Origin: Tubulanus polymorphus
Taxonomy: Eukaryota; Animalia; Nemertea
Length of the DNA stretch: 64,000 bases
Assembly: GCF_964204645.1 (NCBI RefSeq)
Contig: NC_134031.1
Span: 248,001-312,000, forward strand
Direction: 5' to 3'
Shown here: positions 16 through 6,199 of the stretch, piece by piece
Numbering within the stretch: position 1 is the first letter of the stretch
Layout: each line of letters opens with the position of its first letter
The notes under the pieces: generated by a model
Told to the model about the DNA's origin: nothing
Databases searched by the model: none
What the model saw: the letters and a program-made list of their open reading frames with translations, nothing else
Position numbers and translations under genes: made by a program

Positions 16-3000
16 CTACAATTAAACAGAATATTCATTAGGGGCAAATGGAGACGGAGTTCTTTGGGGCATAGTTGAGTTCTGTGGGGCATAGTAGTTC
101 TGTGGGGCTGCTAGGGGTAGTTGGGCTCAGTGGGCTGCTGGGTTTAGTTGCCCTGTAAGGCCCAGTGAGCCACTAGGTCCATTTTGGCCCTGTAGGGCCT
201 GGTTGAGCTCTGTGCAGCCCGTGGGCTGGTGGGTCCCTGTAAGGCTTGGTTGAGCTCTGTACAGCCCGTGGGCTGTTAGGTCCCTGTAAGACCTGGTTGA
301 GCTCTGTACGGCCTGTGGGCTGGTGGGTCCCTGTAAGACCTGGTTGAGCTCTGTACGGCCCGGTGGGCTGGTGGGTCCCTGTAAGGCTTGGTTGAGCTCT
401 GTACGGCCTGTGGGCTGGTGGGTCCCTGTAAGACCTGGTTGAGCTCTGTACGGCCTGTGGGCTGGTGGGTCCCTGTAAGACCTGGTTGAGCTCTGTACGG
501 CCCGGTGGGCTGGTGGGTCCCTGTAAGGCTTGGTTGAGCTCTGTACGGCCTGTGGGCTGGTGGGTCCCTGTAAGGCCTGGTTGAGCTCTGTACGGCCCGG
601 TGGGCTGGTGGGTCCCTGTAAGGCTTGGTTGAGCTCTGTACGGCCTGTGGGCTGGTGGGTCCCTGTAAGGCCTGGTTGAGCTCTGTACGGCCCGGTGGGC
701 TGGTGGGTCCCTGTAAGGCTTGGTTGAGCTCTGTACGGCCTGTGGGCTGGTGGGTCCCTGTAAGGCCTGGTTGAGCTCTGTACGGCCCGGTGGGCTGGTG
801 GGTCCCTGTAAGGCCTGGTTGGGCTCTGTACGGCCCGGTGGGCTGGTGGGTCCCTGTAAGACCTGGTTGAGCTCTGTACGGCCCGGTGGGCTGGTGGGTC
901 CCTGTAAGACCTGGTTGAGCTCTGTACGGCCCGGTGGGCTGGTGGGTCCCTGTAAGACCTGGTTGAGCTCTGTACGGCCCGGTGGGCTGGTGGGTCCCTG
1001 TAAGGCCTGGTTGGGCTCTGTACGGCCCTGTGGGCTGGTGGGTCCCTGTAAGGCCTGGTTGGGCTCTGTACGGCCCGGTGGGCTGGTGGGTCCCTGTAAG
1101 ACCTGGTTGAGCTCTGTACGGCCCTGTGGGCTGGTGGGTCCCTGTAAGACCTGGTTGAGCTCTGTACAGCCCGTGGGCTGGTGGGTCCCTGTAAGACCTG
1201 GTTGAGCTCTGTACGGCCCGTGGGCTGGTGGGTCCCTGTAAGACCTGGTTGAGCTCTGTACGGCCCTGTGGGCTGGTGGGTCCCTGTAAGACCTGGTTGA
1301 GCTCTGTACGGCCCTGTGGGCTGGTGGGTCCCTGTAAGACCTGGTTGAGCTCTGTACAGCCCGTGGGCTGGTGGGTCCCTGTAAGACCTGGTTGAGCTCT
1401 GTACAGCCCGTGGGCTGGTGGGTCCCTGTAAGACCTGGTTGAGCTCTGTACGGCCCTGTGGGCTGGTGGGTCCCTGTAAGACCTGGTTGAGCTCTGTACG
1501 GCCCTGTGGGCTGGTGGGTCCCTGTAAGACCTGGTTGAGCTCTGTACAGCCCGTGGGCTGGTGGGTCCCTGTAAGACCTGGTTGAGCTCTGTACAGCCCG
1601 TGGGCTGGTGGGTCCCTGTAAGACCTGGTTGAGCTCTGTACGGCCCGTGGGCTGGTGGGTCCCTGTAAGACCTGGTTGAGCTCTGTACAGCCCGTGGGCT
1701 GGTGGGTCCCTGTAAGACCTGGTTGGGCTCTGTACGGCCCTGTGGGCTGGTGGGTCCCTGTAAGACCTGGTTGGGCTCTGTACGGCCCTGTGGGCTGGTG
1801 GGTCCCTGTAAGACCTGGTAGGTGTACGTACCAATGAGATACCTAAACTCCAAACATCAGCTCTGATATCATAATCTGGTTTAGTTGGATTTGGGGGATC
1901 AATTCTTTCAGGCTGAAAATAAACAAAAATATTTCATCAAATATCTCACAGGGCAGATAATGTCCTAGTCCTAGTCCGGTATTTACTCACAGCCATATAC
2001 GCAGCACATCCGGCGCTCCTTGTTTTAGCTTTTGAATCGACTAGTCGTCCACTTATTCCAAAATCACAAAGTTTTATTCGACCGCATTCGTCTAGTAGTA
2101 TATTGGATGGTTTTATATCTGAAACACGGAGATAGAGACTGTAAACACAGGAGAGGGGGGAGGGGGGGAGTGGAGAGGGAGGAGGGAGGAGGGAGAGGGA
2201 GGAGAGGAGGGGAGGAGAGGAGAGGGAGGAGAGGGGGAGAGCGCATTCGTCTAGTAGTATATTGGATGGTTTTATATCTGAAACAGGGAGATAGAGAGAG
2301 ACTGTAAACACAGGAGAGGGAGGAGAGGGGGAGAGGGGGAGAGGGGGAGAGCGCATTCGTCTAGTAGTATATTGGATGGTTTTATATCTGAAACAGGGAG
2401 ATAGAGAGAGACTGTAAACACAGGAGAGGGAGGAGAGGGGGAGAGCGCATTCGTCTAGTAGTATATTGGATGGTTTTATATCTGAAACACGGAGATAGAG
2501 AGAGACTGTAAACACAGGAGAGGGAGGAGAGGGGGGAGAGGGGGAGAGCGCATTCGTCTAGTAGTATATTGGATGGTTTTATATCTGAAACAGGGAGATA
2601 GAGAGAGACTGTAAACACAGGAGAGGGAGGAGAGGGGGAGAGGGGAGAGGAGAGGGGGGAGAGGGGGAGAGCGCATTCGTCTAGTAGTATATTGGATGGT
2701 TTTATATCTGAAACAGGGAGATAGAGAGAGACTGTAAACACAGGAGAGGGAGGAGAGGGGGAGAGGGGAGAGGAGAGGGGGGAGAGGGGGAGAGCGCATT
2801 CGTCTAGTAGTATATTGGATGGTTTTATATCTGAAACAGGGAGATAGAGAGAGACTGTAAACACAGGAGAGGGAGGAGAGGGGGAGAGCGCATTCGTCTA
2901 GTAGTATATTGGATGGTTTTATATCTGAAACACGGAGATAGAGAGAGACTGTAAACACAGGAGAGGGGGGAGAGGGGGAGTGGAGGAGGGGAGAGGGAGG

Positions 3001-4522
3001 AGAGGGGGAGAGCGCATTCGTCTAGTAGTATATTGGATGGTTTTATATCTGAAACACGGAGATAGAGAGAGACTGTAAACACAGGAGAGGGAGGAGAGGA
3101 GGGGAGGAGAGGGAGGAGAGGGAGAGGAGAGAGGGAGGAGAGGGGAGGGAGGAGGAGAGGGAGAGAGGAGAGGGAGGAGAGGGAGGAGAGGGAGGAGAGG
3201 GAGGAGAGGGAGGGAGGAGAGGGGGAGAGCGCATTCGTCTAGTAGTATATTGGATGGTTTTATATCTGAAACACGGAGATAGAGAGAGACTGTAAACACA
3301 GGAGAGGGAGGAGAGGAGGGGAGGAGAGGGAGGAGAGGGAGGAGAGGGAGAGGAGAGAGGGAGGAGAGGGGAGGGAGGAGGAGAGGGAGAGAGGAGAGGG
3401 AGGAGAGGGGGAGAGGAGAGGGAGGAGGGAGAGGGAGGAGAGGACGAGAGGGAGAGAGGAGAGGGAGGAGAGGGAAGAGAGGGGAGAGGGAGGAGAGGGA
3501 GGAGAGGGAGGAGAGGGAGGAGAGGAGGAGAGGAGAGGGAGGAGGGGAGAGGAGAGGGAGGAGGGAGAGGGAGGAGAGGACGAGAGGGAGAGAGGAGAGG
3601 GAGGAGAGGGAAGAGAGGGGAGAGGGAGGAGAGGGGAGGGAGGAGAGGGAGGAGAGGAGGAGAGGAGAGGGAGGAGGGGAGAGGGAGAAGAGGGGAGGGG
3701 GGATAGGGAGGAGAGGGAGGAGAGGAGGGGAGGAGAGGGAGGAGGGGAGAGGGAGGAGAGGGGGGATAGGATGGGAGGAGAGGGAGGAGAGGGGAGGGGG
3801 GAACGTATTAGTCTAATATCAGGGCAGAGAGAAGGGTGTGTGTGTAGTACTAACCTCTGTGAATGACTCCATGAACTTCTTTTAAATAATTCAATGCCTT
3901 CAATGTCTGCAATAATGAAATCAATCAATCAATCAATCAATGAGGAGGAGGGCGGGGCATGATGCTACAGGAGGCGGGGCTTTAATCATCATTCATTGAC
4001 TTACCGCTACTGCTAATTTACCCAGAATTCTCTCTGGCATCGGACCTTTTAATTTACGAATTAATTTATCAAAACAAGTTGACATCAACTCCATACAAAT
4101 CCATACATCACTCTGTGTGAGAGAGAGAGACAGAATATCAGATCAATACAACTCCCCCTCACTCCCTCCACTCCCTATAACACCCCCTCCCCCTCAAATC
4201 CATACATCACTCTGTGAGAGAGAGAGACAGACAGAATATCAGATCAATACAACTCCCTCCCTCCCCTTAACTCCCTACAACACCCCCTCCCCCTCAAATC
4301 TATACATCACTCTGTGTGAGAGAGAGAGAGAGAGACAGAATATCAGATCAATACAACTCCCTCCCCTCCCCTTAACTCCCTACAACACCCCCTCCCCCTC
4401 AAATCTATACATCACTCTGTGTGAGAGAGAGAGAGAGAGACAGAATATCAGATCAATACAACTCCCTCCCCTCCCCTTAACTCCCTACAACACCCCCTCC
4501 CCCTCAAATCTATACATCACTC

Positions 4523-4557
<35 letters not shown>

Positions 4558-6199
4558 ATATCAGATCAATACAACTCCCTCCCCTCCCCTTAACTCCCTA
4601 CAACACCCCCTCCCCCTCAAATCTATACATCACTCTGTGTGAGAGAGAGAGAGAGACAGAATATCAGATCAATAGAACTCCCCCTCACTCCTCCACTCCC
4701 TCCGCCCCCCCCCCCCCTCCCCTCAATGTCGATACTTACACTGGTAATAAATGCTCCCACACACTGGACGATGTAAGGACAATCGTGACATTTTAACACA
4801 ACGTCTAAATCCATTATAATGCGTTTGTTTTCTTCACGGTTTCCGGAACGTCGCATTTGCTACAAAACGATCATATCAAAATCAGTTACGCCCCCTAGTG
4901 ATCACAATATCAACTACAAATACCGGGTATCACGCCCCCTAGCGGCGATAATACGAACCTTCACAGCGACGAGGTGACGAGATTGTTTGTGTAACATTTT
5001 AACGACGTGTCCACATGTTCCGTGACCTAATTCACCTAGAGGATCTAAATCTTTTATCGCAGATCGATATTTCTGAAATGAGATACGATATATCAATATC
5101 GAGATATGAGATATCACTCAGATGATGGGGAGAGGGAGGGGGGAGTTTCTAACCTGCCCGTTTAGAGTAAGAATTCCTGTTTGTTTCATTATTTCCTCAT
5201 ATTTTTTCTCTATTTCGGCGCCATCTGGTGGTTTCGGTTGAGGTGACATCGGTATATTTAAATGGCGTTGTCGGCTGCTAGCCGGCGCCGAGCCAGCTCT
5301 CATTTGAACCCCGGCGAACGTTGGTCTCGTCGCCGATACCGTCGAGAATCCGCTGAAACTTCCATCCAGAGGCAGAGGTAAACCCACTGTAGAAATAAAC
5401 ACACATTACTTACTGAATTACACACTGACTGATTTACGAATAGTTACAACTGTGGAACTGGGAACAGATTGTTACAACTGTGGAACTGGGTCCAGATTGT
5501 TACAACTGTGGAACTGGGTCCAGATTGTTACAACTGTGGAACTGGGTCCAGATTGTTACAACTATGGAACTGGGTCCAGATTGTTACAACTGTGGAACTG
5601 GGTCCAGATTGTTACAACTGTGGAATTGGGTCCAGATTGTTTCAAGAATAAAACTGATATATCTATGTAAATGGTCAAGTTTTATTAGCCACACAGTGGA
5701 AAGGTGACGTTAACTGCAGTTAGAGCAGATTGTTAAGAAGACAATTACAAGATTGAAAGGCACACAACAGCTCAGATTCAGATTGGCAGCAATTGAATAA
5801 TAAATGTCAAATGGTTTAAACTACTGATTTGATTATTGGAAATAACTGATCAATTACATTCAAACAATAGTTGAGAGTGGATCAGTGAAACAGGACTCAG
5901 TTCCACAGTTTCCACACAACTGTGGAACAGGGGGCACTATCATCATCATTAGATATTTGATTGTGAAATGTCAGTGTTGTTGTTGATTGAGAGTTGAGAG
6001 GTCAGGTCGGGGATAACAACAGTAAATCACGATCAATCCACAGATAAAACACTGCTATATTTAAAGTACACGTACTGGGTTTAGGTTTAACAGGAAGTTC
6101 CCAGTTTCTCGGATTTCTATCTCGTCTTCTCGACTCATTTTCAGCCTTTAATTTCGCTTCTAAATCGTTTAATTTGTTGTGGAATGAGGAGGTCGCCAT
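1..6199 (-). CDS. MAP2K7: Dual-specificity MAP kinase kinase 7 (MKK7/hemipterous), multi-exon, 3' end outside the window
   Basis: Exons join in frame: 6199-6076, 5386-5154, 5072-4959, 4859-4740, 4112-4005, 3906-3855, 2118-1991, 1912-1832, 15-1. All introns are GT-AG. Motifs seen: [74 protein letters not shown]. The SKAKT activation loop and the N-terminus ([13 protein letters not shown]) are characteristic of MKK7. Confidence 0.96.
185..1820. repeat. 39-40 bp minisatellite, about 41 copies, in MAP2K7 intron 8
   Basis: Unit GGCTGGTGGGTCCCTGTAAGACCTGGTTGAGCTCTGTACGGCC(C)(T/G)GTG. It accounts for the 553 aa and 525 aa ORFs. Confidence 0.97.
1832..1912 (-). CDS. MAP2K7: MAP2K7 coding exon 8 ([27 protein letters not shown])
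   Basis: attttcag acceptor, gtacgt donor, 81 nt. Confidence 0.94.
1991..2118 (-). CDS. MAP2K7: MAP2K7 coding exon 7 ([43 protein letters not shown])
   Basis: gtttcag acceptor, gtgagt donor, 128 nt. Confidence 0.95.
2119..3300 (-). repeat. Tandem array of 9 extra copies of the intron 6 acceptor plus the first 36 nt of exon 7
   Basis: GTTTCAG|ATATAAAACCATCCAATATACTACTAGACGAATGCG recurs with the acceptor G at about 2278, 2388, 2482, 2585, 2708, 2831, 2925, 3049 and 3266. Confidence 0.96.
3301..3802. repeat. Polypurine/polypyrimidine (GGAGA-type) low-complexity tract in intron 6
   Basis: Almost only G and A on the + strand for about 500 nt. Confidence 0.95.
3855..3906 (-). CDS. MAP2K7: MAP2K7 coding exon 6 ([17 protein letters not shown])
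   Basis: ttattgcag acceptor, gttagt donor, 52 nt, ending inside the HRD Asp codon. Confidence 0.92.
4005..4112 (-). CDS. MAP2K7: MAP2K7 coding exon 5 ([36 protein letters not shown])
   Basis: Not in the ORF track; translated by hand. cacacag acceptor, gtaagt donor, 108 nt. Confidence 0.93.
4113..4726 (-). repeat. Tandem array (about 100-113 bp unit) with 5 extra copies of the intron 4 acceptor plus the first 17 nt of exon 5
   Basis: CACAG|AGTGATGTAT(G/A)GATTTG recurs with the acceptor G at about 4212, 4312, 4417, 4522 and 4635. Confidence 0.94.
4740..4859 (-). CDS. MAP2K7: MAP2K7 coding exon 4 ([40 protein letters not shown])
   Basis: ttttgtag acceptor, gtaagt donor, 120 nt. Confidence 0.94.
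4959..5072 (-). CDS. MAP2K7: MAP2K7 coding exon 3 (Gly-rich loop, VAVK)
   Basis: atttcag acceptor, gttcgt donor, 114 nt. Confidence 0.93.
5154..5386 (-). CDS. MAP2K7: MAP2K7 coding exon 2 (docking region, GLPLPLDG...[14 protein letters not shown])
   Basis: tttctacag acceptor and gttaga donor; phase matches exon 1. Confidence 0.9.
5443..5641. repeat. 28-bp minisatellite, about 7 copies, in MAP2K7 intron 1
   Basis: Unit GTTACAACTGTGGAACTGGGTCCAGATT. Confidence 0.95.
6076..6199 (-). CDS. MAP2K7: MAP2K7 coding exon 1 ([41 protein letters not shown])
   Basis: aagATGGCG start context; donor gtacgt at 6075; phase 1. Confidence 0.9.

What the first reader, a model, noticed from the sequence alone, without database searches (positions are those of the whole stretch)
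2083..3820. MKK7 intron 6 is an array of nine perfect decoy 3' splice sites, each carrying 36 nt of the catalytic-loop exon
Seen: each unit has a polypyrimidine tract, GTTTCAG and an exact copy of the first 36 nt of exon 7 ([12 protein letters not shown]), then returns to CT-rich intron. No unit has a good 5' donor. The spliceosome must therefore pass nine acceptors essentially identical to the true one and use the tenth, which a simple first-AG scanning model does not predict. Also seen: near the intron 5' end (3804-3815, minus strand) TAGACTAATACG-ttcccc matches the exon breakpoint TAGACGAATGCG-ctctccc at 10 of 12 positions. Inference: microhomology-mediated duplication across an intron/exon boundary seeded the array, and correct splicing relies on exon definition from the downstream donor. 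Use of a decoy would give extended exons, mostly frameshifted or insertion-bearing, so copy number could tune the amount of functional JNK kinase.
Basis: partly seen in the sequence, partly recalled or inferred. Interest (0 to 1): 0.8.

Follow-up and report, generated by a model that had tools for sequence, protein, structure and literature searches.

The report
Splice-acceptor minisatellite in ribbon-worm MKK7
One intron of a ribbon worm's MKK7 kinase gene is filled with nine exact tandem copies of its own end plus the first 36 letters of the next exon; this is real, but it is a known and apparently tolerated kind of repeat (a "mirage" minisatellite) and not a new splicing device.

Summary
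On the minus strand, the 42-mer TTTCAG plus the first 36 nt of MKK7 exon 7 occurs ten times without a mismatch (0 expected). Nine copies lie inside the 1,736-nt intron 6. The tenth is the real acceptor.

The window is Tubulanus polymorphus, a ribbon worm, not human. NCBI's 423-aa MKK7 model matches every exon at 100% and joins exon 6 to the tenth copy.

Each unit carries a candidate branch point, a pyrimidine tract, the AG and 36 exon nt, followed by a CT-rich spacer of 23-503 nt. No unit has a usable donor.

TAGACTAATACG lies exactly where the CT tract begins, so the array probably began as a slippage duplication in a roughly 105-110-nt intron.

The kind is already described: "mirage" minisatellites in amphioxus, and donor-side versions in human F7, IFI6, CBS, LMNB2 and PDGF, where the extra sites are mostly silent. 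Intron 4 of the same gene holds a second case. Earlier notes of this scan report the same kind in other genes of this genome.

Lineus longissimus has a plain 275-nt intron at this position.

Nothing supports tuning of JNK signalling by copy number. I could get no RNA data.

The parts
3855..3906 (-). MKK7 exon 6 ([17 protein letters not shown] plus the first base of the Asp codon); its donor is GAG|gttagt
   Evidence: 100% match to P0137 residues 234-250
2119..3854 (-). Intron 6, 1,736 nt, phase 1; 50% C, 32% T
3804..3854 (-). Unique 5' part of intron 6 (51 nt). It ends in TAGACTAATACG (3815-3804), the short homology to exon 7 nt 25-36
   Evidence: 10 of 12 identical, extendable to TAyTAGACkAATrCG; the only such hit on this strand outside the array
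3301..3803 (-). Long CT-rich spacer of the first unit (503 nt; within the 499-nt stretch 3305-3803, 329 C, 165 T, 3 A, 2 G)
3230..3300 (-). Decoy 1: 35-nt core (tgtgtttacag...ccgtgtttcag) plus 36 exon nt; use would add 1,147 nt and give a premature stop
3013..3083 (-). Decoy 2 (+930 nt, in frame but a stop at codon 74)
2889..2959 (-). Decoy 3 (+806 nt, frameshift)
2795..2865 (-). Decoy 4 (+712 nt, frameshift; C at -9; unit identical to unit 8)
2672..2742 (-). Decoy 5 (+589 nt, frameshift; unit identical to unit 6)
2549..2619 (-). Decoy 6 (+466 nt, frameshift)
2446..2516 (-). Decoy 7 (+363 nt = 121 codons, in frame and stop-free)
2352..2422 (-). Decoy 8 (+269 nt, frameshift, stop after 38 codons)
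2242..2312 (-). Decoy 9 (+159 nt = 53 codons, in frame and stop-free)
1991..2118 (-). True exon 7 ([43 protein letters not shown]); acceptor AG at 2120-2119, donor GCT|gtgagt
4113..4739 (-). Intron 4 of the same gene: a second array of the same kind. It has a 105-nt unit and 5 decoy acceptors, each with the first 17 nt of exon 5; four carry TGG>TAG

Best explanation
This is a young 'mirage' minisatellite, a tandem repeat whose unit spans an intron/exon boundary. It lies in the single-copy MKK7 gene of the ribbon worm Tubulanus polymorphus. Shown: intron 6 holds nine head-to-tail units, each with a 35-nt acceptor core, the first 36 nt of exon 7 and a CT-rich spacer. The tenth, outermost unit is the real acceptor and continues into the rest of the exon. 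Inferred origin: the ancestral intron was about 105-110 nt, like its 78-98-nt array-free neighbours (introns 5 and 7). Replication slippage or unequal exchange occurred between two imperfect direct repeats about 94 nt apart, TAGACTAATACG in the intron and TAGACGAATGCG in the exon. That duplicated almost the whole intron plus the exon start. Unequal exchange then multiplied the unit, and the CT microsatellite in each spacer grew or shrank. Inferred working: the decoys are largely or wholly unused. Each is followed after 36 nt by the next pyrimidine tract instead of the rest of the exon and a donor, so only the last copy can be recognised as an exon. The array is most likely a tolerated, neutral or slightly harmful by-product of a genome rich in minisatellites with very short introns. 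It is probably not a regulator.
For: Ten exact copies, with variable spacers that all start ctctccccctctcc and end cctccctctcc. Units 4 and 8 are identical, as are units 5 and 6, and one G/C variant is shared by blocks of units. These are the marks of unequal exchange and slippage. The short homology sits exactly at the predicted junction. Array-free introns 5 and 7 of the same gene are 98 and 78 nt. Intron 4 shows the same architecture, with the junction at ...ATTG|agggg against ...TTTG|agggg. TRF finds tandem repeats of period 10 or more over 12.5% of the window, about 38 arrays in 64 kb. The NCBI protein model for this gene (P0137) is 100% identical to every exon and joins HGVIHR directly to [16 protein letters not shown], that is, to the tenth copy. 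Lineus longissimus has the intron at the same position and phase, but it is 275 nt with no tandem repeat, so the array is lineage-specific. No unit has a donor. Literature: amphioxus mirages, including the globin BflGb6 acceptor-side case with 3-6 units, do not disturb splicing and vary in length (PMC3087553; PMC3902484). Human F7, LMNB2 and PDGF use only the authentic site (PMC1557585).
Against: No RNA-seq, cDNA or population data could be reached, so silence of the decoys is inferred from a gene model and from analogy. In human IFI6 and CBS the two nearest pseudo-sites are used, so some use of decoys 8-9 cannot be excluded. If decoy 9 or 8 were used the exon would be only 287 or 397 nt, so lack of a nearby donor alone does not obviously exclude them. 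Intron-definition or first-come splicing would favour decoy 1. Copy number in the three identical 123-nt periods could be mis-assembled.
Confidence: 0.8

Rival explanations
1. Dosage rheostat. The decoys are used at a low rate that grows with copy number. Most products are destroyed by nonsense-mediated decay, so array length sets the amount of functional MKK7. A variant: the decoys trap splicing factors and promote intron retention, as 'decoy exons' do.
For: Seven of nine decoys would give premature stops. The acceptor cores are identical or nearly identical to the true site. MKK7 is single-copy, so any loss would matter. Partial pseudo-site use is documented for IFI6 and CBS.
Against: No transcript evidence. 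The same kind of array occurs in intron 4 of this gene and, by earlier scan notes, in many unrelated genes of this genome, which fits a mutational process better than a gene-specific device. It is absent in Lineus. Known mirages leave splicing undisturbed.
Confidence: 0.07
2. Assembly artefact. The array, or its copy number, was created by mis-assembly of a repeat-rich region.
For: Three consecutive 123-nt periods are 100% identical. The amphioxus globin paper reports a mirage that was wrongly assembled in a draft genome. The locus lies about 250 kb from a contig end.
Against: Units differ in spacer length (23-503 nt) and in a point variant, in an ordered pattern that collapse or over-expansion would not create. 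The genome is in only 77 contigs. The unit is found at one locus only, with no stray haplotig copy. A second, unrelated array of the same design lies 800 nt away.
Confidence: 0.05
3. Raw material for new exons or introns. A decoy is on its way to becoming a new exon or shifting the intron position, as proposed for amphioxus globin mirages.
For: Decoys 7 and 9 are in frame and stop-free. The model is published (PMC3087553). Intron 8 of this gene, filled by a 48-nt array, is absent from Lineus MKK7.
Against: No decoy has a donor. An insertion would duplicate and split the catalytic loop of an essential kinase. The gene model shows no such isoform.
Confidence: 0.03

Closest known systems
'Mirage' minisatellites of amphioxus (Adh3, troponin C, globins BflGb6/BflGb9, PGBD5)
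   Same: A tandem repeat whose unit spans an intron/exon boundary. BflGb6 repeats the 3' end of an intron plus the 5' part of the next exon, as here. The authentic copy sits at the array's edge. Units show concerted evolution, with the boundary copy left out, and here the true copy alone has the 4-nt deletion. Splicing is reported undisturbed (PMC3087553, PMC3902484).
   Different: A different phylum (Nemertea). More decoys (9 against 2-5 in BflGb6) and perfect identity of the exon part. A hypervariable CT-rich spacer in each unit. A recognisable 12-nt homology at the founding junction. No RT-PCR or allele data here.
Human donor-side boundary minisatellites (F7 IVS7 37-bp VNTR; IFI6, CBS IVS13, LMNB2, PDGF)
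   Same: Identical splice sites are reiterated in the intron, and the site next to the exon is chosen. The arrays are polymorphic in length. They are used as natural models of splice-site choice (PMC1557585).
   Different: Those repeat the 5' splice site and this one repeats the 3' splice site. The F7 mechanism proposed (5'-to-3' scanning picking the most upstream donor) cannot explain choice of the most downstream acceptor.
Decoy splice sites and decoy exons that regulate splicing (for example the caspase-2 In100 decoy acceptor; decoy exons promoting intron retention). Recalled from my own knowledge, not checked here
   Same: Intronic acceptor-like elements that are not joined into mRNA, next to pyrimidine-rich protein-binding tracts.
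   Different: Those are single, conserved, experimentally shown regulators. Here nothing shows regulation, and the elements are recent repeat copies.

Membership tests
Mirage (splice-junction) minisatellite | Head-to-tail tandem repeat of a unit of tens to hundreds of nt | tested here: met
   10 units of 94-217 nt, plus a first unit of 574 nt; 0 expected by chance.
Mirage (splice-junction) minisatellite | The unit spans an exon/intron boundary and so reiterates a splice signal plus a piece of exon | tested here: met
   each unit has the pyrimidine tract, the AG and exon 7 nt 1-36.
Mirage (splice-junction) minisatellite | The authentic junction is the outermost copy, continuous with the rest of the exon | tested here: met
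   only the copy at 2118 continues as exon. P0137 matches it.
Mirage (splice-junction) minisatellite | Pseudo-sites are silent, or nearly so, in mRNA | tested here: inconclusive
   Only the NCBI gene model (P0137) uses the true site. No RNA-derived sequence of this species was found, and records of this genome are withheld from the look-up.
Mirage (splice-junction) minisatellite | Length instability or polymorphism | not testable with these tools
   One assembly only. The indirect signs are identical unit pairs and variable spacers.
Recursive (ratchet) splice sites | The acceptor AG is followed at once by a regenerated donor (AG|GTRAGT) | tested here: not met
   the AG is followed by ATATAA in all copies.
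Tandem exon duplication / mutually exclusive exons | Each copy is a whole exon with both an acceptor and a donor | tested here: not met
   only 36 of 128 exon nt are copied, and no donor-like GT is present.
NAGNAG / closely spaced tandem acceptors | Alternative AGs a few nt apart sharing one branch point | tested here: not met
   the acceptors are 94-217 nt apart, each with its own candidate branch point (tttAc at -28).

The most novel reading that the evidence does not exclude
The decoys are used at a low rate that depends on copy number. The array would then act as a heritable, fast-mutating dial on MKK7/JNK dosage through nonsense-mediated decay. In addition, the two in-frame decoys (7 and 9) would yield kinase-dead MKK7 with a duplicated catalytic loop that could act as a dominant negative.
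Probability: 0.06. Interest if true: 0.55.

Novelty: new member of a known kind. Interest (0 to 1): 0.2.

Why it matters
As a structure it is ordinary for this genome and its kind is already named. Its value is as a clean natural test case for 3' splice-site choice. It offers nine acceptors whose core is identical or nearly identical to the true one, differing only in what follows 36 nt downstream, in a single-copy essential kinase. It also preserves the founding junction, a 12-nt imperfect direct repeat. That gives unusually direct evidence that such arrays start by slippage across a very short intron. If mirages prove common in a nemertean as well as in amphioxus, they are a general feature of repeat-rich, short-intron animal genomes and not a cephalochordate oddity.

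Tried and rejected
- **RNA evidence.** I searched the protein collection with a stop-free genomic frame through exon 7 (112-355 aa candidates) and with a relative (183-581 aa). tblastn of all returned proteins against the window found no RNA-derived sequence of this species, only the NCBI model P0137. The look-up of encoding contigs for P0137 returned nothing, because records of this genome are withheld.
- **P0005.** This hit is 98% identical to the window over the 43-residue exon 7 region. It turned out to be an intronless 999-nt ORF on three ENA contigs with no DNA available, so it was useless for intron comparison.
- **Source paper.** The original mirage paper (Canestro et al. 2002, PMC117041) is not held. 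I relied on two papers that describe it.
- **Other copies.** I found no second MKK7 copy and no haplotig copy of the array.
- **Rejected classes.** Recursive splicing, mutually exclusive exons and NAGNAG acceptors all fail a defining feature.
- **Decayed-copy alternative.** I considered that TAGACTAATACG is a decayed old copy of the exon piece and not a founding homology. The match does not extend upstream beyond about 15 nt and the donor lies only 38 nt away. Founding homology is simpler, but the two readings are not strictly separable.
Full report
**What is there**

Read on the minus strand, window 1991-3906 holds two exons of a MAP kinase kinase gene separated by a 1,736-nt intron. The 42-mer made of TTTCAG plus the first 36 nt of the downstream exon occurs ten times with no mismatch, where shuffles expect none.

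Nine copies are followed by CT-rich sequence. Only the copy starting at 2118 continues as coding sequence.

Translated alone by reference, that exon (2118-1991) best matches solved human MKK7 structures. The E-value is 5e-21 with 39 of 42 residues identical; MKK4 and MKK6 score lower.

**Organism and gene model**

The assembly has 268 Mb in 77 contigs, and the window is C7:248,001-312,000.

Among proteins returned by two word searches, P0137 is NCBI's 'dual specificity mitogen-activated protein kinase kinase 7-like [Tubulanus polymorphus]', 423 aa. It is 100% identical to every exon in the window when compared exon by exon with tblastn. The contig is therefore from a palaeonemertean ribbon worm, not from a human.

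I did not build or search a joined spliced model. Exons were searched singly by reference.

The NCBI model reads ...[29 protein letters not shown]..., so it joins exon 6 to the tenth, true acceptor with no insertion. MKK7 is single-copy in this genome, at C7:247,620-254,199.

**Anatomy of the array**

- **5' end of the intron.** It starts with 51 unique nt (3854-3804).
- **First unit.** A 503-nt tract that is almost entirely C and T follows (the 499 nt at 3305-3803 hold 329 C, 165 T, 3 A and 2 G), then the first core and decoy.
- **Later units.** Their lengths are 217, 124, 94, 123, 123, 103, 94 and 110 nt. The true unit is 159 nt.
- **Unit content.** Each unit has a CT-rich spacer that always begins ctctccccctctcc and ends cctccctctcc. 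It then has a 35-nt core, tgtgtttacagtctctctctatctcc[g/c]tgtttcag, followed by the 36 exon nt.
- **Candidate branch point.** The core contains tttAc at -28. The AG two bases after it is too close to be used, and the next AG is the acceptor. Each unit is thus a complete 3' splice-site module. This is inferred from consensus, not tested.
- **Variants.** The -9 base reads G,G,G,C,C,C,G,C,C along the decoys and G in the true copy. The true copy alone lacks 4 nt of the core.
- **Identical units.** Units 4 and 8 are identical, and so are units 5 and 6.
- **Donors.** No GT in a unit resembles the gene's real donors.

**Consequences if decoys were used**

| Decoys | Outcome |
|---|---|
| 1-6 and 8 (seven decoys) | run into a stop codon |
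| 7 | stop-free, in-frame insertion of 363 nt (121 residues) |
| 9 | stop-free, in-frame insertion of 159 nt (53 residues) |

The two in-frame insertions would duplicate the catalytic-loop motif. The resulting exons would be 287 to 1,275 nt, against 52-128 nt for the neighbouring exons.

**Origin**

The last 12 nt of the copied exon piece are TAGACGAATGCG. They match TAGACTAATACG at 3815-3804 in 10 of 12 positions. That is the only other hit with two or fewer mismatches on this strand in the window, and it sits exactly where the unique 5' part of the intron gives way to the CT tract. The per-position probability is 3.4e-5, with about 2 such hits expected anywhere in 64 kb.

This is what a slippage or unequal-exchange duplication between two short direct repeats predicts. 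Each decoy ends with the exon repeat and goes on with what follows the intron repeat.

The shortest unit (94 nt) plus the 51 unique nt gives an ancestral intron of about 105-110 nt. That is in line with array-free introns 5 and 7 of the same gene, at 98 and 78 nt. With an intron of that size, almost any 94-nt duplication touching it must include a boundary (my arithmetic: 15 of 201 possible placements lie wholly inside).

**Context**

- **Intron 4 (4739-4113).** It has the same design. A 105-nt unit is repeated about five times, each with the acceptor and the first 17 nt of exon 5. Four copies carry TGG changed to TAG. The founding junction lies at a 3-4-nt homology 14 nt after the donor.
- **Intron 8.** A 48-nt unit repeated 34 times fills it, starting 12 nt after the donor.
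- **Repeat load.** Tandem repeats of period 10 or more cover 12.5% of the window.
- **Lineus longissimus.** Its MKK7 gene spans 3.9 kb. It has the homologous intron at the same position and phase, but that intron is 275 nt of unique sequence with no tandem repeat. The array arose in the Tubulanus lineage, and the near-identity of the units says it is young or kept uniform by exchange.
- **Earlier notes of this scan.** They report the same kind of array in other genes of this genome (POLR1B, PASK, SLC49A4, ASAP and others) and gave me the name 'mirage'. I treated them as leads. I checked the literature myself and the intron 4 case myself.

**What is known**

[quoted passage not shown] One is globin BflGb6, which repeats the 3' end of an intron plus the start of the next exon, with 3 or 6 units on the two haplotypes. 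The paper reports RT-PCR evidence that splicing is not disturbed, concerted evolution that leaves out the boundary copy, and one mis-assembled case.

PMC3902484 adds PGBD5 and cites Adh and troponin C.

PMC1557585 lists human genes with donor-side versions: F7, IFI6, CBS, LMNB2 and PDGF. In F7 the pseudo-sites are functional but not chosen. In IFI6 and CBS the two nearest pseudo-sites are also used.

I found no paper describing this in nemerteans, and I did not search exhaustively.

**How it most likely works**

Shown: the structure, the lack of donors, and the gene model's use of the last copy.

Inferred: the true copy wins because it alone is followed by the other 92 nt of the exon and a good donor. 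Each decoy is followed after 36 nt by the next unit's pyrimidine tract, which may also bind repressive pyrimidine-binding proteins.

This is not trivial. Intron definition or first-come kinetics would favour the first decoy, and decoys 8-9 would give exons of acceptable size. The known cases nevertheless show that such arrays are tolerated.

The regulatory idea (copy number tunes JNK kinase dosage) has no support and is made less likely by how common the pattern is at unrelated junctions.

**Verdict**

The kind is already known, so this is a new member from a new phylum and not a new mechanism. Interest is low to moderate, mainly as a natural model for acceptor choice.

Noticed in passing
window 4113-4739 (minus): Intron 4 of the same MKK7 gene is a second acceptor-side mirage. 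A 105-nt unit is repeated about 5.4 times, giving five decoy acceptors with the first 17 nt of exon 5. Four have the Trp codon TGG changed to TAG. The founding junction shows a 3-4-nt homology (ATTG / TTTG) 14 nt after the donor.
   Followed up: partly
window 17-1831 (minus); L011:4260-4487: Intron 8 (after ...SLGISL) is filled by a 48-nt unit repeated 34 times, starting 12 nt after the donor. Each unit carries CGTACAG, which resembles the donor region GTACGTACA. Lineus longissimus MKK7 has no intron at this position (the exon is continuous through ITLVELATG). This is therefore an intron gain or loss between nemerteans at a repeat-filled intron.
   Followed up: partly
window 5443-5645: A 28-nt unit repeated 7 times lies inside MKK7 intron 1, 56 nt upstream of the exon 2 acceptor and not touching a boundary. 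In all, about 4.1 kb of the 6.6-kb gene is tandem repeat, against a 3.9-kb repeat-free gene in Lineus.
   Followed up: no
whole window: Tandem repeats of period 10 or more cover 12.5% of the 64 kb (about 38 arrays). The locus lies about 250 kb from the end of contig C7, possibly a subtelomeric repeat-rich zone.
   Followed up: no
P0001 (Corapipo altera), P0002 (Malurus melanocephalus): Two partial bird MKK7 models in NCBI contain tandemly duplicated stretches of the same kinase region. In P0001 about 130 residues are repeated twice on a 1,372-nt contig. These are probably assembly or annotation artefacts.
   Followed up: no
P0005 (ENA ERZ25072999, three contigs of 0.7-2.2 Mb): An intronless 999-nt ORF encodes a 332-aa MKK7 lacking the N-terminal region, present on three contigs of one ENA assembly. 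It looks like a processed retrocopy family in an unidentified animal. No DNA was available.
   Followed up: no
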